A DNA stretch of 64,000 nt from positions 1-64,000 of IMG/VR virus record IMGVR_UViG_3300023181_000025; one strand, given 5' to 3'. The translations under genes were made by a program, and so were the position numbers. The first letter of the stretch is position 1, and each line of letters opens with the position of its first letter. The notes below the pieces were generated by a model. That model was not told where the DNA came from. It made no database searches and saw only the letters and a list, made by a program, of their open reading frames with translations. Positions 3,517-16,298 of this stretch are shown piece after piece.

Positions 3517-4890
3517 TTACTTTTTAAGCGGTTCTTCTTGTAAGGTTACACCTAAATCTTTTAACCAAGTGTCATACATTGATTCATTTTTATGGTATGC
3601 GCATTTTATTAAAGTGATTTTTCGGCCATATATTAAGCCTGCAATTGCAAAGTGCAACCTATCTGTTTCTATCTCTGTATGTTGGCTAGCCAACTTAAGA
3701 TAATCATTTGGAGTGGGACATATAAACACAGGATCCCCCAAATCATTTTCTATATCTACAAAATAGGATTCTATATCTTTTCTAATATATTTCCCCGCCC
3801 CCTTCGTCGGTTCAGGCGAAGTTAATTTAGGAATAGCTAAAGCTAAGTCCGGCATAAGTAATAGATTTGGATGGTTTCCTTTTGCTATTTCAAAAGATTT
3901 TTTTTCACGAACGATTAAAAGACTGGCTAAATTTAAATGATCTCCATACTCCTCAATGGATTGTGGCATTACAATAAAAGGCTTGTTTGCTGCTTTGAGG
4001 AACTTTCCTATTTTTGAGAACAATTCATTATGCTTCCACCTCCCAGAGACGCCGCCGCCGCCCGCCCAACAATAAATATCACAATCTTCTGAGGGGATCA
4101 TCGTTTCTATTGGGTAGAACTCGTGCTCTATTCCATGTCTGTTCAACAACATTCGGGTTCCTTGATAAATAAGGCCATCCCCCACATTACATTTTGGAAC
4201 CAAAATGGCCACTTTTTTATTTCTAAGTATTTTTAATAAGTCCTCCCATTTGCTGTCAGAAATCAGACCTTCTTTTCCGGATTGTAGCCGAGGCATCATC
4301 TCCTTGCCGGTTCTATCTGATATTCCTCCAATCGTTCCAAACAACATCTTATCCAAACACAAAAGTTTTAGCTCCGACTTTTCCAACGCCAAATGTAACA
4401 GGGATTCATAGCAAAACCCTTGGTCAGAAAGGTCAACAAGTGCCGCAAGTCTATAAGCTATTTCTAAAAAACCCTTTTCTTTCAAAAGTTTTGTGTTGTA
4501 TAGCACTGCGTGAGAACCATAATAAGGTAAGAGAACTTCTTTTGTCTCTCCGTCTCCTGTAGGGATTATTTTTGTTATCTCTGCTCCCAACAATATCGCT
4601 CCGCAATCTTCTGGAAATTCAGGTAAATCTATATTAATATCCACCCCTTCAAAAACTGTTACGTCATCTTCAAGAACCAATACTGGACCTTTGGATTTTT
4701 TTATAATCTCCAAATGACTTAAAGAACAACCTCTGATAGCCCTAGAGTCTCTTTTAGTCTCCCAGATAGGGCAAATAGCTCTAAATATTTTGGTCTTCCT
4801 TAAAGATTTACGGATATTTCCAATACAGTCTTCTCTATCTATACGTTTGTCGTCGTGGATTATTTGGCATTCGAAATCTTTTAAAAACAT
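3517..4890 (-). CDS. Fusion of a GT25-like glycosyltransferase (N-term) and a polysaccharide pyruvyltransferase (C-term)
   Basis: GCSLSH...VLVLEDD...GSHAVLY (GT25-type); NVGDGLI...GGGG...PQSI...VREKKS...PDLA...TDRLHFAI (PS_pyruv_trans-type). Confidence 0.8.
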   Translation of the reverse strand: MFLKDFECQIIHDDKRIDREDCIGNIRKSLRKTKIFRAICPIWETKRDSRAIRGCSLSHLEIIKKSKGPVLVLEDDVTVFEGVDINIDLPEFPEDCGAILLGAEITKIIPTGDGETKEVLLPYYGSHAVLYNTKLLKEKGFLEIAYRLAALVDLSDQGFCYESLLHLALEKSELKLLCLDKMLFGTIGGISDRTGKEMMPRLQSGKEGLISDSKWEDLLKILRNKKVAILVPKCNVGDGLIYQGTRMLLNRHGIEHEFYPIETMIPSEDCDIYCWAGGGGVSGRWKHNELFSKIGKFLKAANKPFIVMPQSIEEYGDHLNLASLLIVREKKSFEIAKGNHPNLLLMPDLALAIPKLTSPEPTKGAGKYIRKDIESYFVDIENDLGDPVFICPTPNDYLKLASQHTEIETDRLHFAIAGLIYGRKITLIKCAYHKNESMYDTWLKDLGVTLQEEPLKK

Positions 4891-4899
4891 AATTCACAA

Positions 4900-4928
4900 T
4901 TAATAATACATTTTCCCGGTTTTGTCAA
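4900..4928 (-). promoter_or_regulatory. sigma70-type promoter of the GT25-pyruvyltransferase gene
   Basis: TTGACA-N17-TATTAA, ATG 9 nt downstream. Confidence 0.55.
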
Positions 4929-7462
4929 GAAATTACGTCCCAAACATTTGAACCGACATATATTAAAGTGAATGTTCCTAATGATGGAATAGTAGTAGTT
5001 CCATTTAGCGTAAGTCCCGTAGGGGATAGGGTAATATCGTAAAGACTTGCATTCCTAATAATAATCCTTGATCCTGTAGGAATTGTCATTACCCCCATTT
5101 CAATAGTTGATGCTGATGTATGTGTATGGCGCAGATATTTTCCTATATAATCAGAAGTTAACGATAATGTTGCGCCAGATCTTTCTTCAATTATTTCCGC
5201 TTCTATAGATAAGGCTTTTCTCCATTTTGCAGCCCAATTAGATCCTAGTGTTACATTTTCATACCCGCCCGCATCAGGCAAGTAAAAATTACCATTATTT
5301 ATTTGAAGCGCAAGCTGGTTAAAGCTTTTATCCCATACGCCATCTGTCGCTACGTCTTCTGCGCTATTAAAAAAATGAACTCTTGAATATAGGTATTGAA
5401 ATTCTTCCCTAAATTGAGCTACAACCGTTTGAGATGGTGGGATAGTCGTCGAAAGTTGAGAAGCAAGAGTATTTATAACAGACGTAAGGATATTATCGGG
5501 GATATCAAGCGCGGTTTTCCACGCTTCTTGCCAGTCGCCTTCCAATGTTACAGTTGCTTCGCTTTCGCCAGTGTCCTTTAGAGTGAGTTCACCATCTACA
5601 ATGGACATCCCATTTTGGGATAAGCTCGTGTCCCAAACCCCATCGGCATATGTTTCTGTGTCTTCTCTGTGGAGATTTTCTATTTTTTGATACCCTTCGG
5701 GAGAAAGAAAACCTGCGTCATCTTCAGAAGCTAAGCCATGAGAACCCCCTACAGAGCCAACGTGTGCGTCGAAATCTACTTTATCCGCCTTTTCGTTAAG
5801 ATCCGAAATTGGTAAAAATTCAATATAATAATTTAATTCTCCAAGTTTTCTTACCCAAAACCTTGTTCTTTCAACTATTTCTGAAGTATCTAAATCAGTT
5901 TCTTCATATGTGTAATAAAAGAATTGTCCTGGTTTACCAATAGTCCCTCCTCCATATTCGAAATCTAATTCAAGTTGACCTTCTGCGTCATCACCAGGTT
6001 CCCAAATTTCAACCTCATCAATTTCGTTTCCCTCTCCAAACCAAAATTGATCAATACCCGTTCTTCTAATTTCCCATCTGGACTCATCGGAAGACCAAGA
6101 GGCGGTTACTCCATTGCCGTCATCATAATATGGTTTTCCATTTATAGTATCTTCGGGAACCTCTTCAAAATAAGTTTCGAATATAGAATCTGCACCGGAA
6201 CCCGTAAAAGATAATACCCTGTCCTCAACTATAGGTGCATTTAATTCAATGGGATCAGGAATAGAGCCTAAATTATTTTTTGCTTGGGCTTGCTCTTCGC
6301 TCGTTAAAATTTGATAGTCATCAAACCTTAAGGCGGAATTATTAATAAATCCGCCCAATATAAAATTGTTAGGAACTAACTGCCAGTAAACCGGACTTTC
6401 CTTCAGACAGATAAATAGTTCGTTTTTATAGACGATAACATCCCCTAATTTGCCCGCAGTTCCTACTTCGTTATAGGGTGTTAGTTCTACATTAATCGGC
6501 TGCAAATTAGACATATTAATCCATCCAGGATCTTCGTCATAAAAATCATCTGTTGTCGTTTGATATAAAAACGAGGTATCACCAAGAAAAAAATTAATTT
6601 GCCATACTTGAAGATCCAAACTGTAAGCTAAAGATATATTGTAGTAAGTTCCTAGCCCATACTCTCCTGTATCGCTATAATTTATTTTGCCATCACTATC
6701 AGGTATATCGCTAGTTCCTGCGTTTAAAAGAACAACTTTCGCAAAATATGGCACATCGCCGCCCAAAACGAATCCTTGTCCGCCGTTTACAGGCTCGGAA
6801 TCCGCTAAAACAGGTTTATTGGTTTTTATATCAAATAAATTTTTTCCCTGCTTTGCAGATAAAGGTCTCGTGGCGGAACTAGAGTCTAGCGCGTCTACGG
6901 GAACTATATCAAGAGTATTTCTCCAAGCTGATATCCAAGAAGAAGCCATTGTGACCGTTATCCCTTCTCCGTAAAGGTGAAAATCGCCTCCGACAACCTT
7001 TAAAGAGGGCGAGCTTGTTACAGTGTTCCATAATCCTATTGAATAGGACTCAGAAGATGACACATATATAGAATTTATTTTAATTTTATCAGAAGAAGAT
7101 AAAAATCCATTTTGAGTGGTAGTCGCGGCTGCGTGAGCCGCCCCCCCAGACCCAACGTGTGTCGTATAAACCGATGTATTTAATTTCTGTGCCAATTCTT
7201 CTTCAAGGCCGTCAATTGAACTCAAAGATAAGCTCCCTATGGTTTCTTCGACAATTGCTGGCAACTGTTCTTCTATTTCCTCTATGATAGATTCTACAAT
7301 GGCGCTATCGCTAAAATCTTTTATAGCTTTTGCAAATGTGGGGTAAACCCCGGAATCGGTCGTTACCGTTTCCGTGTCTCCACCATCGGTGAATTTATAG
7401 GCTTTGTCCGAAGAACGTATAAACTTTGCGATGCTTTCTGATAATTGACTGATGCTTGGCAT
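4925..7462 (-). CDS. Tail fibre/appendage-like structural protein with internal repeats
   Basis: N-terminal TVTTDSGVYPTFAKAIK; two HVGS.G..H..A.....GFLS units; three GxW...W...W(R/K)xxLxI units; C-terminal beta-rich domain ending WDVI. Confidence 0.6.
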   Translation of the reverse strand: MPSISQLSESIAKFIRSSDKAYKFTDGGDTETVTTDSGVYPTFAKAIKDFSDSAIVESIIEEIEEQLPAIVEETIGSLSLSSIDGLEEELAQKLNTSVYTTHVGSGGAAHAAATTTQNGFLSSSDKIKINSIYVSSSESYSIGLWNTVTSSPSLKVVGGDFHLYGEGITVTMASSWISAWRNTLDIVPVDALDSSSATRPLSAKQGKNLFDIKTNKPVLADSEPVNGGQGFVLGGDVPYFAKVVLLNAGTSDIPDSDGKINYSDTGEYGLGTYYNISLAYSLDLQVWQINFFLGDTSFLYQTTTDDFYDEDPGWINMSNLQPINVELTPYNEVGTAGKLGDVIVYKNELFICLKESPVYWQLVPNNFILGGFINNSALRFDDYQILTSEEQAQAKNNLGSIPDPIELNAPIVEDRVLSFTGSGADSIFETYFEEVPEDTINGKPYYDDGNGVTASWSSDESRWEIRRTGIDQFWFGEGNEIDEVEIWEPGDDAEGQLELDFEYGGGTIGKPGQFFYYTYEETDLDTSEIVERTRFWVRKLGELNYYIEFLPISDLNEKADKVDFDAHVGSVGGSHGLASEDDAGFLSPEGYQKIENLHREDTETYADGVWDTSLSQNGMSIVDGELTLKDTGESEATVTLEGDWQEAWKTALDIPDNILTSVINTLASQLSTTIPPSQTVVAQFREEFQYLYSRVHFFNSAEDVATDGVWDKSFNQLALQINNGNFYLPDAGGYENVTLGSNWAAKWRKALSIEAEIIEERSGATLSLTSDYIGKYLRHTHTSASTIEMGVMTIPTGSRIIIRNASLYDITLSPTGLTLNGTTTIPSLGTFTLIYVGSNVWDVIS

Positions 7463-7746: not shown

Positions 7747-7944
7747 ATGAAGAGTGACACTATTTTGGCAAGTCCCGACGAATCGGGTTGGTATTGGTTT
7801 AAAAAGAACAAGAAGTCTGACGTAGTTATTGTTTTTGTAAATGATGACGGAGAGGCAACAGCGACGACAGAAGATGGCTTTTCTTATATTTTAGATGATT
7901 TAATTGGTCTATGGAGTCTAATTAACCTCCCGGACGATTTTTAA
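7747..7944 (+). CDS. Hypothetical small protein
   Basis: P.ESGWYW motif seen in small phage proteins. Confidence 0.6.
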   Translation: MKSDTILASPDESGWYWFKKNKKSDVVIVFVNDDGEATATTEDGFSYILDDLIGLWSLINLPDDF

Positions 7945-7961
7945 TAAAATAAATTAATAAT

Positions 7962-8639
7962 ATGAAAAAAATAATTTTAGCCGCATTTTTCTGCGTATGC
8001 ACTTTTTCTTGCTCCCAAAAGGTTTCCCCTATTATTGGAATTCCTCCGGCCCCAGCTCAATCTCAGAGTGCCAGACCTAACGTGGAGAAAACCCAAGAGA
8101 GAATTGACAAGAGCCTTAATAATAATACCTCTATACAAAAAAATCTAAAGGAGCAAAATGACGCTCTCTTACAACAAAAAATTAATATTTCTGCGGCCCT
8201 TGCTCAAGCTGAAAAAATGAAGGAAAGGGCGCTTGCAAAACAAGCCATAACTGAATTAGAGGCCGAAAAGCACATTACGGAAATTAAAGCTATGGAAAGT
8301 CGCAATCTTTTTCTTGAGGGTATAAATAAAACAATGGCTGATACAGTTGTAGAACAAGCGTCTGAGTTACAGTCCGCCAAACAGGAGAACTCAAAAGCTC
8401 GGGAGCTTTTAATTTTAAGCGATAATGAAAAACTCGCACTTCGAGAACAAAATCTATTTTTATCTAAGTCTTTAGAGTTAAAGAATAAAGAAGTCGTGGA
8501 CCTTTCAGAAGAAAACAATAAAATTAACCAAAAATTAGCCAATGCAAAGGTATATAAAGGGTGGATTATTGGCGGAGCTTCATTGCTTTTAGTTGGAGGC
8601 GTGGTATTTGTCCTTTTAAAGATTTATAGACCTTTTTAA
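7962..8639 (+). CDS. Putative unimolecular spanin-like lipoprotein
   Basis: Signal peptide MKKIILAAFFCVCTFS-C (lipobox-like), long coiled coil, C-terminal TM helix WIIGGASLLLVGGVVFVLL. Confidence 0.55.
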   Translation: MKKIILAAFFCVCTFSCSQKVSPIIGIPPAPAQSQSARPNVEKTQERIDKSLNNNTSIQKNLKEQNDALLQQKINISAALAQAEKMKERALAKQAITELEAEKHITEIKAMESRNLFLEGINKTMADTVVEQASELQSAKQENSKARELLILSDNEKLALREQNLFLSKSLELKNKEVVDLSEENNKINQKLANAKVYKGWIIGGASLLLVGGVVFVLLKIYRPF

Positions 8640-8688
8640 TTATTATTTTGCATAAAAATACAAATTAAAGGTATTATTAAATAAGTAA

Positions 8689-9396
8689 ATGTTATTTGAC
8701 TTCCTTAAAGAACAGTCTGCAAATTTTAATTGGCTTCCCGAAGCTCTGGGCGTTCTCGCCGCAGTTTCTTTGGTGTTTAAGACGGTTAGAAAGTGGATTT
8801 TTGCAGCCTTTCGAGCCATATGCTCCTTTTTTACTTCCCCCTCAAAGACATATAAACTGGTCAATGATTTAACAACTAAATTGGCCAATGTTGAAGCAGT
8901 TTCAAATAATTCAGCAGGCAAAATACAAAATCTAGAAGATTTAATTGGTTATAATGGTGGGTCCGGCCTAATGGATAAGGTTGGTTATTTGCTAGGATAT
9001 CAGGCAAATGACTTTTGGTTTCGCGACCAACCCGGATTTATTTGTTCAGAACTAGGGGAAAACTTAGATACAACTCATTGCTATTGTAAGCTTTTAGGGG
9101 TTACTAATAGAACCGATTTAAATAATCGTAATTGGCAGGGCTTTGTAGATAAAGATCAGAACAAAGGCTATTACGAAGAATTTTTGGAAGTCGCCAAAAG
9201 ACGGGAAACATTTCGGCGCACTATTGGGTTTAAAGACTCAAATGGTAATGATACTGGAGTTTGGTTGGTTGTCGCTAATCCGATATCCTCAGATAAGGCA
9301 AAAGTGGCAAGATATATTGGATTATTGTATCCCTTTGACCCCACTTCAAAGCAAATAGCGGAAAAATATAAATGGCCGCTTATGCCTCCCTTATAA
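8689..9396 (+). CDS. Membrane protein with C-terminal PAS-like domain (holin candidate)
   Basis: N-terminal hydrophobic helix, coiled coil with NGGSGLMDKV, then PAS/PAC pattern (YCKLLG...W..FV...F.DSNG...WLVVANPI...YIG). Confidence 0.55.
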   Translation: MLFDFLKEQSANFNWLPEALGVLAAVSLVFKTVRKWIFAAFRAICSFFTSPSKTYKLVNDLTTKLANVEAVSNNSAGKIQNLEDLIGYNGGSGLMDKVGYLLGYQANDFWFRDQPGFICSELGENLDTTHCYCKLLGVTNRTDLNNRNWQGFVDKDQNKGYYEEFLEVAKRRETFRRTIGFKDSNGNDTGVWLVVANPISSDKAKVARYIGLLYPFDPTSKQIAEKYKWPLMPPL

Positions 9397-9404
9397 AAAT
9401 TCAT

Positions 9405-10142
9405 ATGAATAAAAAACAAGCTCGAAAACAGTCTAGTAATAAGGAAGATAAAAGTCCCTACGCTTTTCAGGGTAAAAAGCAAGATTTTAATATACCAATT
9501 ACAGAAAAAATACCTTGGACTGAAAAACAGTTGAGGTTTAATGAATTAGCTCAAAGTAAAGAATGCAAAATATTATTTGTGTCTGGTGTAGCGGGAACTG
9601 GAAAGTCGCTTTTAAGTGTCTATGCTGCCCTTAATGCAATTAATGCAAAGAAGGTCTCAGACTTGGTCTATCTTAGGTCCGCTGTAGAAAGCTCATCAAG
9701 TAAGCTTGGTTTTCTTCCCGGAACGGCGGAAGATAAGCTTTCTCCTTATCTTGAGCCCCTTATGGATAAACTTTCTGAGTTAATTGGCGAAGGGAATACA
9801 CAAGAAATCATAAAAAGACAATTAGTTTCCGCCCGGCCCATTAACTACTTAAGAGGTTGCCAATTTTCTGGTAAGTATGTTATTCTCGATGAAGCGCAAA
9901 ACCTCACTTTTACTGAAATGCAAACTTTTCTTACGAGGGTTGGCGAATTTAGTAAAGTTATTATTGCTGGTGACCCTATGCAAAGCGATATTGGAAACAG
10001 AAGCTGCTTTACAAAGGTTTTTGACTCGTTTGATAATGAAACTGCGCAAGAAAACGGAATCTATACCTTTAAATTTGGTAAAGAAGACATTGTTCGTTCT
10101 AAAATATTAAAATTTATTGTAGAAGTATTAGAAAATATTTAA
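9405..10142 (+). CDS. phoH: PhoH-family ATPase
   Basis: GVAGTGKS, LGFLPG, YLRG, ILDEAQN, GDPMQSD, DIVRS; probable start ATG 9405. Confidence 0.95.
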   Translation: MNKKQARKQSSNKEDKSPYAFQGKKQDFNIPITEKIPWTEKQLRFNELAQSKECKILFVSGVAGTGKSLLSVYAALNAINAKKVSDLVYLRSAVESSSSKLGFLPGTAEDKLSPYLEPLMDKLSELIGEGNTQEIIKRQLVSARPINYLRGCQFSGKYVILDEAQNLTFTEMQTFLTRVGEFSKVIIAGDPMQSDIGNRSCFTKVFDSFDNETAQENGIYTFKFGKEDIVRSKILKFIVEVLENI

Positions 10143-13559: not shown

Positions 13560-16298
13560 ATGTGGACACCGGGATATCATTGTAGGACAGATAAGTTTAT
13601 CGACACAAATACTAAGTTGTCGGAGATTGAGGGGGACATAACTACAAAAGAGGCTCAGGTTGCTTTTGCGAAATTTTGTTGCGCGAACCCTCATTGGGCC
13701 GCAAAGATTTTAATGGGAATTGACTTATATCCTATTCAGGATGTCATGATTAGGGCGATGATGCAAAAGGATTTCTTTTTAGGTGTTTGTGGGCGGGGAT
13801 TCGGCAAATCTACAATTGCAGGGGTATTCTTGCCCTTATATGCTATATTTAATCCCGGAGTTAAGATAGGAATAACATCACAGACATTCCGTCAGTCGAG
13901 AAATATCTTCGAAAAAATCGAAGAAGCCATTGCCTCCCCCAAAGGAAAATTCCTAAAACAATGCCTGAATGGCCCCCCAAAGCACAACAATGATGCTTGG
14001 AGCATGAAATTTGGCACATCTGAAATTGTCGCCCTACCGTTAGGCTGTGTAACTGGAAATACCCTTATTCGAACTTCAAATGGTCTCAAACGCATCTCCG
14101 CGCTCGAACCAGAAATGCATACATATGAATACGGTGTAACTTATAAACCTTGGAAAAGGGGCTTATGTTGGGCCAATATAGATGAGCAGGTTGATACACT
14201 TGACGGTGTCTCACGATGCACAAATGTGCTATATAAAAGAGAAGAGGAGTGCCTTGAGCTTGTCTTGCGCGGGGGATTTGGCCTTCAGGGATCTAAAAAA
14301 CACAAGGTGTTGGTTTATTCTAAGGATGGAGAGCATCTATGGAAAGAATTATCACGAATTACACTAAAGGATTACGTCGCAATTGATGTCCGCGAAAGAT
14401 TCTCAAAACAACCAGAATTTAATTTAACTTCCGAAATTGGATATAAATACGGGTGCCAACAAGTATTTTCTAAAGCTACTGATGAAAGAATTTTAAACTG
14501 TTCTGAAAATTTCGGGCGTGGGTTCTTTGCGGGCATTTTCGAATCTGCCGGAGAATATTCGAGCAATGGATATGGTAATAAACCCTGTATTTCCGTAGCC
14601 ATGAAGAGTGAAGATATAGCTAAGGACGTTCAAATTGCGTGCCTGTCTTATGGTTTTGTAATTAAAAGAATGAAAAATAAACTATTTATTACTAAATTTA
14701 AACTTAGAAGTTTTCTTGAAAAGTTTCCCACTGTAAAGAAGAATTTAAAAAGTATACTCCCGGATATTCCCACGCCTTCTTATGGAGCCATTAGCTCTTC
14801 GGAAGCAGAAAAATATGACAAGGGGTTTATGTTTTGCAAAATCATTAGCAAAAAGAAGCTGGGGAAAGTTCCAGTATATGATTTGCGCGTCCCTGCTTAT
14901 AATAACTATATCTCGAATGGCTTCGTCTCCCATAATTCCGGGGATAAAATTCGGGGCTATCGTTTTAATTTGCTTGTTATTGACGAACTTTTGCTTCTTT
15001 CCGAGAAGGTTATTAATGAAGTTTTAATGCCTTTCATGGCTATTCAGGCTAACCCCCGCGAAAGGCAAAAAATAAGGGATGAAGAAACGGCTATGATTAA
15101 TGCGGGGGTCATGACTGAAGACGAACGCACAGTATTTTCTAGCAATAAACTTATAGGTCTTACTTCCGCGAGCTATCAATTTGAATATCTATACAAGATG
15201 TTCCAAGATTACAAAGACCAAATTTGTGACAAAGAAGCCAAGAATGTTTCACATGCCGTAATGCAACTGTCTTGCGAAATAGCTCCAATTGGTCTTTATG
15301 ACGAAAAGAATATTGAAATGGCTAAAAAAACCTTTAGTCAGTCGCAATACGACCGAGAGTATATGGCGCATTTTACCGGAGATAGCTCTGGATTCTTTTC
15401 CGCCAAGTCTTTACACGCTGTATCCTTAGAAAAGGGAGAGTTTCCAACTGTTTTGGTTAAAGGGGATAGAGTAAAAGACTATATATTGGCTATTGACCCT
15501 AACTATGACTCATCAGAAACCTCTGACGATTTCGCTATGTGCCTAGTAGAATTGGATCATGACGCTAGAACCGCAGTGATGGTTCACGGCTATGCGCTTG
15601 CAAGCTGCACCCTTCAAGAACGCATGGGATATGTAAAATATCTATTTGATAATTTTAATATTATATATATGATTGTAGATAGAGCGGCGGGAGCTAAATT
15701 TATTAAGGATATTAATGATTTAGAAGTTCTTGATTTCAAACTTGGCATCTTTGAGGCCGATTTTGATACCTTCAGTGAGGAAGAGTTGTTTGAAGCTCGA
15801 AAAAGCTATTCTAATGACACAAAAGTGAAAAATATAGTTCACGCGCAAAACTTCTCAGCCCAATGGATTAGATACGCTAACGAAACTCTGCAAGGGGCTA
15901 TAGAAAATAGAACAATCATGTTTGGTTCGCCTGTGGACGCCGAAGAAATATCTGTTGATTCATTGGCCCCGATAATTAAAGAGCTTAAATTTGACGATAC
16001 CGAATATAAGAATGATAGGGACAGTCTGAAAATGAAATTGGGCGATTTCGTAGATAGGCAAGCTATAATTATTGGAAAAACAAAACGCCAATGCGCTTTA
16101 ATTGAGGCGAGTAGTGGGGGCGGGGCAATGAAATTTGACTTGCCCCAATCCCTTAAAAAGCAAACTGGTCCCGATAAGGCCCGTAAAGATAGCTATTCTG
16201 CCTTATTGTTGGCCAACTGGGGTAAAGAATGCTATTTTAATATGATGAGCGCGCCTGTTAAGAAAAAAAATAGGATTTTACCTAGATTTTTGGTGTAA
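13560..16298 (+). CDS. terL: Terminase large subunit, intein-containing
   Basis: Walker A GRGFGKS, IRGYR..LVIDE Walker B, C-terminal RNase H-like nuclease (AIDP, SDD, KDSYSA). Confidence 0.9.
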   Translation: MWTPGYHCRTDKFIDTNTKLSEIEGDITTKEAQVAFAKFCCANPHWAAKILMGIDLYPIQDVMIRAMMQKDFFLGVCGRGFGKSTIAGVFLPLYAIFNPGVKIGITSQTFRQSRNIFEKIEEAIASPKGKFLKQCLNGPPKHNNDAWSMKFGTSEIVALPLGCVTGNTLIRTSNGLKRISALEPEMHTYEYGVTYKPWKRGLCWANIDEQVDTLDGVSRCTNVLYKREEECLELVLRGGFGLQGSKKHKVLVYSKDGEHLWKELSRITLKDYVAIDVRERFSKQPEFNLTSEIGYKYGCQQVFSKATDERILNCSENFGRGFFAGIFESAGEYSSNGYGNKPCISVAMKSEDIAKDVQIACLSYGFVIKRMKNKLFITKFKLRSFLEKFPTVKKNLKSILPDIPTPSYGAISSSEAEKYDKGFMFCKIISKKKLGKVPVYDLRVPAYNNYISNGFVSHNSGDKIRGYRFNLLVIDELLLLSEKVINEVLMPFMAIQANPRERQKIRDEETAMINAGVMTEDERTVFSSNKLIGLTSASYQFEYLYKMFQDYKDQICDKEAKNVSHAVMQLSCEIAPIGLYDEKNIEMAKKTFSQSQYDREYMAHFTGDSSGFFSAKSLHAVSLEKGEFPTVLVKGDRVKDYILAIDPNYDSSETSDDFAMCLVELDHDARTAVMVHGYALASCTLQERMGYVKYLFDNFNIIYMIVDRAAGAKFIKDINDLEVLDFKLGIFEADFDTFSEEELFEARKSYSNDTKVKNIVHAQNFSAQWIRYANETLQGAIENRTIMFGSPVDAEEISVDSLAPIIKELKFDDTEYKNDRDSLKMKLGDFVDRQAIIIGKTKRQCALIEASSGGGAMKFDLPQSLKKQTGPDKARKDSYSALLLANWGKECYFNMMSAPVKKKNRILPRFLV
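14046..14936 (+). mobile_element. Intein (297 aa) in TerL with degenerate LAGLIDADG-like region
   Basis: PLG|CVTGNTLI...GSKKHKV...VYDLRV..NNYISNGFVSHN|S; internal FFAGIFESAG. Confidence 0.9.

What the first reader, a model, noticed from the sequence alone, without database searches (positions are those of the whole stretch)
8689..9396. Holin-position membrane protein carrying a PAS-like sensor domain
Seen: an N-terminal hydrophobic helix, a coiled coil with NGGSGLMDKV and a C-terminal ~110-aa PAS/PAC-pattern domain with no output domain. The gene lies between a spanin-like gene and phoH. Known: T4 holin T is a single-TM holin whose soluble domain receives the lysis-inhibition signal. Inference: this is a ligand-sensing holin or antiholin that could time lysis by host metabolic state, which would be an unusual lysis-control device.
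Basis: inference. Interest (0 to 1): 0.68.

Follow-up and report, generated by a model that had tools for sequence, protein, structure and literature searches.

The report
Membrane-anchored PAS protein of phage lysis cassettes
This jumbo-phage gene encodes a small membrane-anchored protein whose sensor-type (PAS) domain faces the cell interior; its undescribed family repeatedly sits beside cell-wall-degrading lysis genes in unrelated phages, so it probably helps set when the host bursts.

Summary
The ORF (8689-9396, +, 235 aa) is real. The described anatomy holds: an N-terminal hydrophobic helix (weak here, strong in the family), a long helix, an invariant NGGSG..D loop, and a C-terminal PAS domain with no output domain.

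The PAS call rests on:
- a pLDDT-94 model;
- 488 Foldseek hits, those listed all PAS/LOV;
- 23 of 90 relatives matching Pfam PAS models.

The gene belongs to an unnamed phage family of at least 145 clusters at 50% identity.

Charge bias (128 of 138 members) predicts N-out/C-in, so the PAS domain is cytoplasmic, opposite to T4 holin T.

"Holin position" is imprecise:
- In close relatives the gene follows a full cassette: spanin-like lipoprotein, 3-TM holin-like protein, signal-peptide endolysin.
- In this window the holin-like and endolysin genes are missing.

Lysis linkage is nevertheless real:
- An endolysin lies within four genes in 7 of 19 family lineages, and several unrelated endolysin families are involved.
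- Other lineages place the gene after the portal gene, or between RNR and Mom-like genes.
- None of 116 endolysin-anchored loci carries it, so it is an accessory.

Best reading: an accessory lysis-timing regulator that acts through its membrane helix. No ligand, partner or lysis effect has been shown.

The parts
8689..9396 (+). Whole gene: 235-aa TM-anchored coiled-coil/PAS protein (includes the stop codon)
   Evidence: ORF list. It has 3 close homologues and a family of 145 representatives. The model has pLDDT 94.
8689..8730 (+). Residues 1-14: short acidic N-terminal stub with an amphipathic helix, predicted to be extracytoplasmic
   Evidence: Helix over residues 2-11 in the model. The mean net charge of the N flank is -0.83, against +2.99 for the C flank, across 138 members.
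8731..8778 (+). Residues 15-30: hydrophobic helix rich in small residues, the putative single TM anchor (marginal in this protein)
   Evidence: Kyte-Doolittle 19-residue maximum is 1.49 here, against a family median of 1.84. The G/A/S/T fraction is 0.41, against 0.29 for other TM segments in the same loci.
8779..8946 (+). Residues 31-86: basic juxtamembrane stretch followed by one long helix (putative coiled-coil stalk)
   Evidence: Model helix 31-86 with pLDDT 87-96. Variable in length and sequence across the family.
8947..8976 (+). Residues 87-96: the GYNGGSGLMD loop, the family's signature motif (NGGxSxKD in distant members)
   Evidence: N89, G90, G93 and D96 are invariant in alignment A3. 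N, G, G and D are invariant in alignment A4. The model shows a loop at 87-93.
8968..9018 (+). Residues 94-110: N-cap helix leading into the PAS core
   Evidence: Model helix 94-110 with pLDDT 91-98.
9022..9336 (+). Residues 112-216: PAS core (five strands plus helices). Residues conserved across the family are P115, L135, W149, G190 and W192.
   Evidence: Model, Foldseek PDB, Pfam scan of family members, PDB profile search, conserved columns.
9340..9393 (+). Residues 218-235: short C-terminal helix and tail (consensus P-x-D-D-x-A..IA....W). No output domain follows.
   Evidence: Model helix 218-226. A220 is nearly invariant.
7962..8639 (+). Upstream gene: 225-aa protein with a lipoprotein-type signal, a coiled coil and a C-terminal TM (unimolecular-spanin-like architecture)
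   Evidence: ORF. C-terminal TM Kyte-Doolittle 2.43. Homologous to the 167-172-aa lipoprotein/TM genes of relatives (tblastn; features).
7747..7944 (+). Small conserved ORF (65 aa) that heads the same gene string in all close relatives
   Evidence: tblastn shows 51-63% identity to the 58-64-aa ORFs of L002, L004 and L005.
9372..10142 (+). Downstream gene: PhoH-like ATPase. Its annotated start overlaps the target's end; the true start may be a later ATG.
   Evidence: Pfam PhoH E 9e-53. PHROG 170. Same gene order in relatives.

Best explanation
Identity and architecture. The gene encodes a member of an undescribed, phage-restricted protein family. The parts, in order, are:
- a short acidic N-terminal stub outside the membrane;
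- one TM helix rich in small residues;
- a basic juxtamembrane stretch and a long cytoplasmic helix;
- an invariant NGG..D loop;
- a cytoplasmic PAS_3-type domain with only a short C-terminal helix after it.

Proposed function. The family is a recurrent but dispensable accessory of phage lysis cassettes. The most likely role is a lysis-timing modulator, antiholin-like or holin-tuning. The PAS module would sense a cytoplasmic cue or bind a partner, and pass the signal 'inside-out' through the N-terminal stalk to the TM helix. The TM helix would then act on the holin or another lysis membrane protein within the bilayer.

This phage. The adjacent holin-like and endolysin genes seen in close relatives are missing. 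The gene sits between the spanin-like gene and phoH, at the head of the late/structural gene string.

Status of each step.
- Shown: the ORF, the architecture, the PAS fold, the size of the family, and the gene neighbourhoods.
- Inferred: the topology, the lysis-regulating function, and the direction of signalling.
- Unknown: the ligand and the partner.
For: Fold and architecture:
- Model with pLDDT 94.1.
- 488 Foldseek PDB hits at E<=1e-3; the 50 listed are all PAS/LOV/EAG.
- 23 of 90 members match Pfam PAS_3.

Family size: 145 representatives at E<=1e-3, most of them 190-260 aa.

Topology: the C flank is more positive than the N flank in 128 of 138 members (also 97 against 3).

Lysis linkage in the window's own clade:
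- The order is small ORF / lipoprotein+TM / 3-TM protein / signal-peptide lysozyme-like protein / this gene / PhoH.
- The start of this gene overlaps the endolysin's stop codon.

Lysis linkage in distant lineages (about 20-27% identity to the target):
- L013: directly after an endolysin matching phrog_9589 (E 1.6e-12), which follows a 3-TM protein and a lipoprotein+TM protein.
- L015: directly after a lysozyme-like gene.
- L056 and L057: directly before an endolysin matching phrog_7 (E 1e-45 and 3e-25), with a 4-nt overlap. That endolysin has a weakly hydrophobic, SAR-like N-terminus.
- L065: directly after a 297-aa protein whose N-terminal ~65 residues match endolysin PHROGs (E 1e-13).
- L055 and L060: directly after a 2-TM protein, with an endolysin two to three genes downstream.
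- L058 and L066: an endolysin two to three genes upstream.

Distribution on the family tree: these lineages lie on both sides of the deepest split.

Enrichment:
- 7 of 19 lineages have an endolysin within four genes: binomial p = 0.0017 at a null of 0.10.
- 5 of 19 are directly adjacent: p = 3e-4 at a null of 0.033.

Accessory status: 0 of 36 and 0 of 80 endolysin-anchored loci carry the gene.
Against: - No experiment and no detected homology to any characterised holin, antiholin or spanin.
- In this window no endolysin or holin homologue is found, so the lysis link here is by descent only.
- One clade of seven loci lies between a class II RNR and a Mom-like gene. Three loci lie between the portal gene and a head-morphogenesis gene. 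Others lie after an exonuclease or a major head protein. A function unrelated to lysis could explain all of these.
- The window protein's own TM segment is below the usual hydropathy threshold.
- The lineage count and the null rates in the binomial test are my own rough estimates. Neighbour annotation was incomplete, because only selected neighbours were scanned.
- The homodimer prediction gave no verdict.
- No cofactor-binding signature was identified in the PAS domain.
Confidence: 0.45

Rival explanations
1. The protein is itself a holin or pinholin-like membrane permeabiliser. It would be a single-TM holin with a large soluble domain, analogous to class III holin T but with the domain inside the cell.
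For: - In L056 and L057 the gene sits immediately upstream of, and overlaps by 4 nt, an endolysin with a SAR-like N-terminus. The two form a two-gene unit on the + strand, which is the classic holin position.
- In L065 it is the only protein with a hydrophobic N-terminal helix next to the endolysin. No other ORF within about five genes reaches the TM threshold.
- The TM helix is rich in small residues, with about 1.9 small-xxx-small motifs per helix, as in helices that pack into oligomers.
Against: - Where the cassette is complete (the window clade, L013, L014, L055, L060, L058), a separate 2-3-TM holin-like protein is present.
- The gene is absent from 116 endolysin-anchored loci, so these endolysin families work without it.
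- In many lineages it is not near lysis genes at all.
- The window protein's hydrophobic segment is weak.
- There is no match to any holin family in Pfam or PHROGs.
Confidence: 0.15
2. It is a late-expressed host-modulating or phage-phage interaction protein unrelated to lysis timing. One version is a membrane-tethered PAS decoy that heterodimerises with host PAS-containing sensor kinases or chemoreceptors. Another is a superinfection-exclusion factor. Proximity to lysis genes would only reflect the tendency of accessory genes to collect at the ends of late operons.
For: - Neighbourhoods vary: portal/MuF-like, RNR/Mom-like, exonuclease, major head protein.
- The gene is a rare accessory.
- PAS domains commonly mediate protein-protein interaction (general knowledge of the family).
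- In the window the gene is separated from any endolysin.
Against: - Direct adjacency to several unrelated endolysin families, in lineages on both sides of the family's deepest split, is hard to explain by chance insertion.
- Start/stop overlaps with the endolysin gene in L002, L004, L056 and L057 suggest co-translation.
Confidence: 0.25
3. It has a virion-assembly role at the membrane, for example tethering or timing portal/prohead initiation, as T4 gp40 assists gp20 at the inner membrane.
For: - In L010, L011 and L012 the gene lies between the portal gene (Pfam Phage_portal) and a head-morphogenesis gene matching phrog_2468.
- In L082 it follows the major head protein.
- In the window it lies about 5 kb upstream of the terminase and head genes.
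Against: - Only a minority of lineages show this context.
- There is no homology to any assembly factor.
- The gene is absent from most phages with similar head modules, and lysis adjacency is more widespread.
Confidence: 0.08

Closest known systems
T4 holin T with antiholins RI and RIII (lysis inhibition)
   Same: Here too a lysis-cassette membrane protein combines one TM helix with a globular domain that could receive a timing signal. RIII shows that holin control from the cytoplasmic side exists (PMC11413866 and PMC8385771, abstracts listed).
   Different: - No sequence or fold relation: the domain here is PAS.
- The predicted topology is reversed. Here it is N-out/C-in with a cytoplasmic domain, whereas T is N-in/C-out with a periplasmic domain, and RI is periplasmic.
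- Separate multi-TM holin-like genes accompany this family.
Short PAS/LOV proteins and PAS sensor modules of histidine kinases (PpSB1-LOV 3sw1, FixL 8js5, EAG/hERG PAS 4llo)
   Same: The PAS core fold is the same, with an N-cap helix and a short C-terminal helix. These are the best structural matches (Foldseek E 2e-6 to 1e-5, TM-score normalised to target 0.6-0.78). The profile also matches PAS_3.
   Different: - No kinase, GGDEF or HTH output domain follows.
- The long helix and the TM anchor are N-terminal to the PAS domain, so the only candidate 'output' is the membrane helix.
- The LOV flavin-binding cysteine motif is absent from the sequence (my reading). Heme-ligand histidines were not checked.
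- Sequence identity is 9-16%.
VqmA-Phage of vibriophage VP882 (PAS + HTH quorum-sensing receptor that triggers the lytic programme)
   Same: It is a phage-encoded PAS protein that links a small-molecule cue to host killing (PMC8284805, abstract listed).
   Different: VqmA-Phage is a soluble transcription factor with a DNA-binding domain, acting at the lysis-lysogeny switch. This protein has no DNA-binding domain, is membrane-anchored, and is encoded among late and lysis genes.
phrog_9869 and BFVD entries annotated 'PAS domain [uncultured Caudovirales phage]' (A0A6J5NY05, 205 aa), plus Cellulophaga phage phi19:1 R9ZZL0 (240 aa)
   Same: Viral proteins of the same size and overall architecture. 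10 of 90 family members match phrog_9869. The structural matches cover 190-229 columns.
   Different: All are uncharacterised. The window protein itself matches no PHROG, and tblastn against cultured phages finds nothing.
Lambda Rz-type i-spanin
   Same: N-terminal TM helix followed by a long helix, encoded in a lysis cassette next to a lipoprotein.
   Different: - An i-spanin is N-in/C-out with a periplasmic coiled coil. Here charge bias predicts the opposite orientation, and the closest PAS folds listed are intracellular sensor-type domains.
- The cassette already contains a lipoprotein with its own C-terminal TM, which is a unimolecular-spanin-like architecture.

Membership tests
PAS fold (Pfam clan PAS_Fold; PAS_3, PF08447) | Five-stranded antiparallel beta-sheet flanked by helices in the order beta-beta-helices-beta-beta-beta | tested here: met
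   The AF2 model (pLDDT 94) has strands 116-120, 125-128, 175-182, 188-198 and 208-215, with helices across 130-170. Foldseek gives 488 PDB hits at E<=1e-3; the 50 listed are all PAS/LOV/EAG.
PAS fold (Pfam clan PAS_Fold; PAS_3, PF08447) | Significant match to a PAS profile HMM (PAS_3 gathering score 25.6 bits) | tested here: inconclusive
   The target alone scores 12.6 bits, E 0.18, though over profile positions 9-87 of 89. 23 of 90 homologous family members match PAS_3 at E<=0.01, best 1.2e-8. The family profile reaches PDB PAS chains at E 0.008.
PAS sensors with a known cofactor (LOV/FMN, FixL/heme, Aer/FAD) | Cofactor-ligating residues (LOV Cys in the NCRFL motif; proximal His for heme) | not tested
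   No NCRFL-like motif is visible in the sequence (my reading). The pocket residues of the model were not compared with those of ligand-bound structures.
Class III holin (T4 T, Pfam Phage_holin_T) | Sequence membership in the holin T family | tested here: not met
   No Pfam or PHROG holin match for the target or for 90 family members.
Class III holin (T4 T, Pfam Phage_holin_T) | N-in/C-out topology with a large periplasmic C-terminal domain | tested here: not met
   Charge bias predicts N-out/C-in in 128 of 138 members. This is a prediction only, not an experimental topology.
Holins in general | Lethal, triggerable permeabilisation of the cytoplasmic membrane that releases or activates the endolysin | not testable with these tools
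   Needs expression and complementation assays.
Holins in general | Encoded next to the endolysin as the cassette's membrane protein | tested here: inconclusive
   - Met in L056, L057 and L065.
- In the window clade, L013, L014, L055, L058 and L060 another 2-3-TM protein fills that role.
- In the window no endolysin is nearby.
Antiholins and lysis regulators (functional class, not a homology family) | Binds or antagonises the holin and shifts lysis time | not testable with these tools
   The only evidence is gene neighbourhood: 7 of 19 lineages are near an endolysin. No holin-PAS complex job was run, because the holin-like protein has only two homologues in the database.
i-spanin (Rz-like) | Type II (N-in/C-out) membrane protein with a periplasmic coiled coil that pairs with an outer-membrane lipoprotein | tested here: not met
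   The predicted orientation is the opposite. The closest PAS folds listed are intracellular sensor-type domains. There is no spanin PHROG or Pfam match.

The most novel reading that the evidence does not exclude
The family is a new class of lysis-clock component: an 'inside-out' PAS sensor whose only output is its own transmembrane helix. It would read a cytoplasmic cue late in infection (energy or redox state, a metabolite, or a phage product) and gate holin triggering accordingly. Diverse environmental phages would thereby gain condition-dependent lysis timing without superinfection sensing. In a few lineages (L056, L057, L065) it may have become the holin itself.
Probability: 0.3. Interest if true: 0.8.

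Novelty: new variant of a known kind. Interest (0 to 1): 0.62.

Why it matters
Lysis timing sets burst size and phage fitness. The only well-understood cases of signal-responsive lysis control are T-even lysis inhibition and a few analogues.

A widespread family that couples a bona fide PAS sensor fold to a membrane anchor inside lysis cassettes would be a second, mechanistically different route to conditional lysis. The family has at least 145 clusters at 50% identity and was found almost entirely on phage-like metagenomic contigs.

It would also give an unusually simple model for PAS signalling in which the transmembrane helix is the effector. The predicted ligand pocket and the small size of the protein make it an attractive, testable part for engineered, signal-gated lysis.

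Even if the lysis link fails, the family is a large, structurally well-defined and unannotated group of phage membrane proteins. It deserves a name.

Tried and rejected
Searches that found nothing:
- tblastn of the target and four family members (P0010, P0021, and the L060 and L069 homologues) against 50,697 cultured-phage records: no match.
- PHROGs for the target: none.
- The search for related loci with the broad alignments A2 and A4 failed for lack of a conserved stretch. A7 found nothing and A6 found one locus.
- The genome-contig scan with A10 gave only three weak loci. This single-pattern scan found almost no copies in sequenced bacterial genomes.

Models and complex prediction:
- The first AF2 run with four sequences was unusable (pLDDT 53).
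- The homodimer job (complex prediction, two copies, alignment A2) returned 'no answer' (score 0.09 against a mark of 0.42). It counts neither for nor against dimerisation.
- A holin-PAS complex job was not sent. The holin-like protein of relatives has only two homologues in the database, so a negative result would have meant nothing.

The window phage's own lysis genes:
- HMMs built from the relatives' holin-like, lysozyme-like, CHAP-like and spanin-like proteins were searched against all window ORFs. Only the spanin-like gene scored, weakly. BLAST with 13 endolysins found nothing.
- Viral-contig scans anchored on the lysozyme-like and CHAP-like endolysins did not return the window's contig. 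These pattern scans can miss it.

Rejected ideas:
- i-spanin: predicted orientation is wrong.
- Membership of T4 holin T: no homology and opposite predicted topology.
- I first guessed that the 657-aa neighbour in the L069-type loci was a portal. It is a class II ribonucleotide reductase.

Cultured-phage lead: Cellulophaga phage phi18:3 gp090 (172 aa) lies two genes upstream of a glycosyl hydrolase annotated from Pfam PF09374. It has the same length as the BFVD structural hit S0A2B2. The family HMM does not detect it, and I could not confirm that the two are the same protein.

Literature: three full-text searches found no paper connecting a PAS domain with a phage lysis cassette.
Full report
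**1. The observation**

The ORF at 8689-9396 (+) exists and encodes 235 aa from an ATG.
- Upstream, 7962-8639 encodes a 225-aa protein with a lipoprotein-type signal (MKKIILAAFFCVCTFSCSQ), a coiled-coil middle and a strong C-terminal TM segment (Kyte-Doolittle 2.43).
- Downstream, 9372-10142 is PhoH (Pfam E 9e-53).
- The wider string continues with a sigma-70 region-2 protein, an ERCC4 nuclease and an intein-containing large terminase.
- The window is the first 64 kb of a 211-kb IMG/VR contig, so this is a jumbo phage.

The hydrophobic N-terminal helix is weak in this protein. Its best 19-residue hydropathy is 1.49 and the core is W15-F30.

**2. The family and the fold**

The word-indexed search found only three close relatives, at 44-55% identity. 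An exhaustive profile search found 145 cluster representatives at E<=1e-3, and 74 at E<=1e-10. Most of them are 190-260 aa long.

With four sequences AlphaFold2 failed (pLDDT 53). With 90 sequences it gave pLDDT 94.1. That model shows:
- helices 2-11 and 15-29;
- one long helix, 31-86;
- a loop at 87-93 carrying the NGGSG motif;
- helix 94-110;
- a canonical PAS core, with strands 116-120, 125-128, 175-182, 188-198 and 208-215 and helices across 130-170;
- a last short helix, 218-226.

Three further results support the PAS assignment.
- Foldseek returned 488 PDB hits at E<=1e-3. The 50 listed are all PAS/LOV/EAG domains.
- A family profile hits PAS chains first in the PDB.
- 23 of 90 members match Pfam PAS_3, best E 1.2e-8, and others match PAS_4, PAS, PAS_9 and PAS_8.

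The target alone is sub-threshold (E 0.18). Nothing follows the PAS domain, so there is no output domain.

**3. Family-wide features**

- The N-terminal TM segment is robust across the family: median hydropathy 1.84, with 95 of 138 members at 1.6 or more.
- It is enriched in small residues. The G/A/S/T fraction is 0.41, against 0.29 for other TM segments in the same loci, with about 1.9 small-xxx-small motifs per helix.
- The N flank is acidic (mean net charge -0.83) and the C flank basic (+2.99). The C flank exceeds the N flank in 128 of 138 members.
- By the positive-inside rule this predicts N-out/C-in. The stalk and the PAS domain would then be cytoplasmic, which fits the intracellular PAS/LOV/FixL type of the best structural matches listed.
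- The loop motif NGGxSxKD (GYNGGSGLMD here) is the most conserved stretch outside the PAS core. Its role is unknown.

**4. Neighbourhoods in the window's own clade**

In the close relatives (L001-L005, L007-L009) the gene order is as follows:
- a small ORF of 58-64 aa;
- a lipoprotein with a C-terminal TM, 167-172 aa, homologous to window 7962-8639;
- optionally, tail-fibre-like SGNH genes;
- a 3-TM holin-like protein of 114-145 aa;
- a signal-peptide protein of 207-225 aa. In L002, L004 and L005 it has weak Phage_lysozyme and endolysin-PHROG matches. The L009 counterpart has no family match;
- in L005 only, an additional signal-peptide protein matching endolysin PHROGs, with a weak CHAP match;
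- this gene, whose start overlaps the endolysin's stop in L002 and L004;
- PhoH.

The gene therefore sits after the endolysin, not in the holin position, and a better holin candidate exists. In the window the holin-like and endolysin genes are simply absent: only 49 bp separate the spanin-like gene from the target. No homologue was found anywhere in the 64 kb by tblastn, HMM or BLAST.

**5. Neighbourhoods across the family**

I collected 46 loci that carry a family member and annotated selected neighbours with PHROGs.

Lysis contexts recur with different endolysin families.
- L013: lipoprotein+TM, then a 3-TM protein, then a signal-peptide endolysin (phrog_9589, E 1.6e-12), then the PAS gene.
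- L014: the same endolysin type, four genes upstream.
- L015: lysozyme-like gene, then the PAS gene.
- L056 and L057: the PAS gene overlaps by 4 nt the start of an endolysin matching phrog_7 (E 1e-45 and 3e-25). That endolysin has a SAR-like N-terminus.
- L065: an endolysin-PHROG-matching protein (E 1e-13), then the PAS gene.
- L055 and L060: a 2-TM protein, then the PAS gene, then an endolysin matching phrog_15351 and phrog_2649 (E 7e-31) two to three genes on.
- L058 and L066: an endolysin two to three genes upstream.

Non-lysis contexts also occur.
- Between the portal gene and a head-morphogenesis gene (phrog_2468) in L010-L012.
- Between a class II ribonucleotide reductase and a Mom-like gene in one clade of seven loci.
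- After an exonuclease (L071) or a major head protein (L082).

On a tree of 35 family proteins, the lysis-linked lineages lie on both sides of the deepest split. The RNR/Mom group is a single clade.

I counted 19 lineages by hand.
- 7 have an endolysin within four genes. The binomial p is 0.0017 at an assumed null of 0.10.
- 5 are directly adjacent. The p is 3e-4 at a null of 0.033.
These figures are rough, because both the null rates and the lineage count are my own estimates.

Conversely, none of 36 lysozyme-like-anchored loci and none of 80 loci anchored on the CHAP-like endolysin family contains a family member within 5 kb. The gene is a rare accessory, not a core lysis component.

**6. 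Interpretation**

The data fit best a dispensable modulator of lysis that works at the cytoplasmic face of the membrane. It has a PAS module, a stalk and a TM helix as its only plausible effector. That implies inside-out signalling to a membrane partner, most simply the holin. I put this at about 0.45.

The rivals are:
- The stronger 'it is the holin' reading, at about 0.15. The two-gene units in L056 and L057, and L065, keep it alive. The separate holin-like genes elsewhere and the gene's dispensability argue against it.
- A lysis-unrelated membrane-tethered PAS protein, such as a host-sensor decoy or an exclusion factor, at about 0.25.
- A membrane-associated assembly role suggested by the portal context, at about 0.08.

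Nothing bears on which ligand, if any, is sensed. 'Host metabolic state' remains speculation.

**7. Comparison with known systems**

- The family is not homologous to T4 T, RI or RIII, to lambda S, or to Rz. Its predicted topology is the reverse of both T and Rz.
- The nearest folds are short LOV/PAS proteins and sensor-kinase PAS modules.
- The nearest phage precedent for a PAS sensor is VqmA-Phage of VP882 (PMC8284805, abstract listed). That protein is a soluble transcription factor.
- Ten family members fall in phrog_9869, which has no known function. BFVD holds uncharacterised viral look-alikes, including Cellulophaga phage phi19:1 R9ZZL0.
- Three full-text literature searches found no report of a PAS protein in a lysis cassette.

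I therefore rate it a new variant of a known kind. The kind is lysis-cassette regulators, and the function is unproven.

**8. Limits**

- Topology is predicted from charge only.
- Neighbour annotation was selective.
- The rest of the 211-kb genome could not be read.
- The homodimer complex job gave no verdict.
- No holin-PAS pair could be tested meaningfully, because the holin-like protein has too few homologues.

Noticed in passing
window 7962-8639 (+): A 225-aa protein with a lipoprotein-type signal (…TFSC|SQ), a long coiled coil and a C-terminal TM helix. This is a unimolecular-spanin-like architecture, but helical rather than beta-rich like T1 gp11 as I recall it. The same architecture recurs in relatives at 167-172 aa and in L013 at 226 aa. 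No Pfam or PHROG family matches it.
   Followed up: partly
window 8640-8688, compared with L002:1590-4597 and L005:2741-4813: Relatives carry a 3-TM holin-like gene and a signal-peptide lysozyme-like endolysin between the spanin-like gene and the PAS gene. L002 and L004 add tail-fibre-like SGNH genes there, and L005 adds a CHAP-like endolysin. In the window only 49 bp lie there, and no homologue is found in the 64 kb. Where this jumbo phage keeps its holin and endolysin is unknown.
   Followed up: partly
window 13560-16298 (+): The large terminase subunit is interrupted by an intein (Pfam Intein_splicing, E 2e-11, residues 217-459). The terminases of relatives (892-918 aa) carry it too.
   Followed up: no
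window 10704/10857-11543 (+): A sigma-70 region-2-like protein (Pfam E 3e-4) is conserved at 66-69% identity in relatives, between PhoH and the terminase. It is a candidate phage-encoded late sigma factor.
   Followed up: no
window 3517-4890 (-) and 4925-7462 (-): A protein with a polysaccharide pyruvyl transferase domain (Pfam E 1e-20) lies next to an 845-aa tail-fibre-like protein on the opposite strand.
   Followed up: no
L067:4420-6899 compared with L069:4868-6838: The class II ribonucleotide reductase upstream of the PAS gene is one 657-aa ORF in L069. In L067 it is split into 595-aa and 216-aa ORFs. The second begins with a segment that looks like the end of an intein or homing endonuclease, which suggests an insertion in the RNR gene.
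   Followed up: no
L055:3505-4125: A 206-aa ORF whose N-terminus reads like a GIY-YIG homing endonuclease (my reading of the sequence, not tested with a tool). It sits between the PAS gene and the endolysin and breaks up the cassette.
   Followed up: no
L086 (Cellulophaga phage phi18:3, KC821620) 3613-6453: An apparent lysis cassette in a cultured phage: gp088 (1 TM), gp090 (172 aa, hydrophobic N-terminus), gp091 (5 TM), gp092 (glycosyl hydrolase, annotated from Pfam PF09374), gp094 (N-terminal TM) and gp095 (C-terminal TM). gp090 has the same length as the BFVD PAS-like structural hit S0A2B2 from this phage. The family HMM does not detect it, and the identity of the two was not confirmed.
   Followed up: partly
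L060:7909-8370 and L054:7903-8382: Proteins of 153-159 aa with a cleavable-looking signal peptide (no lipobox cysteine) and a C-terminal TM helix lie just downstream of the PAS gene. They may be another unimolecular-spanin-like variant.
   Followed up: no
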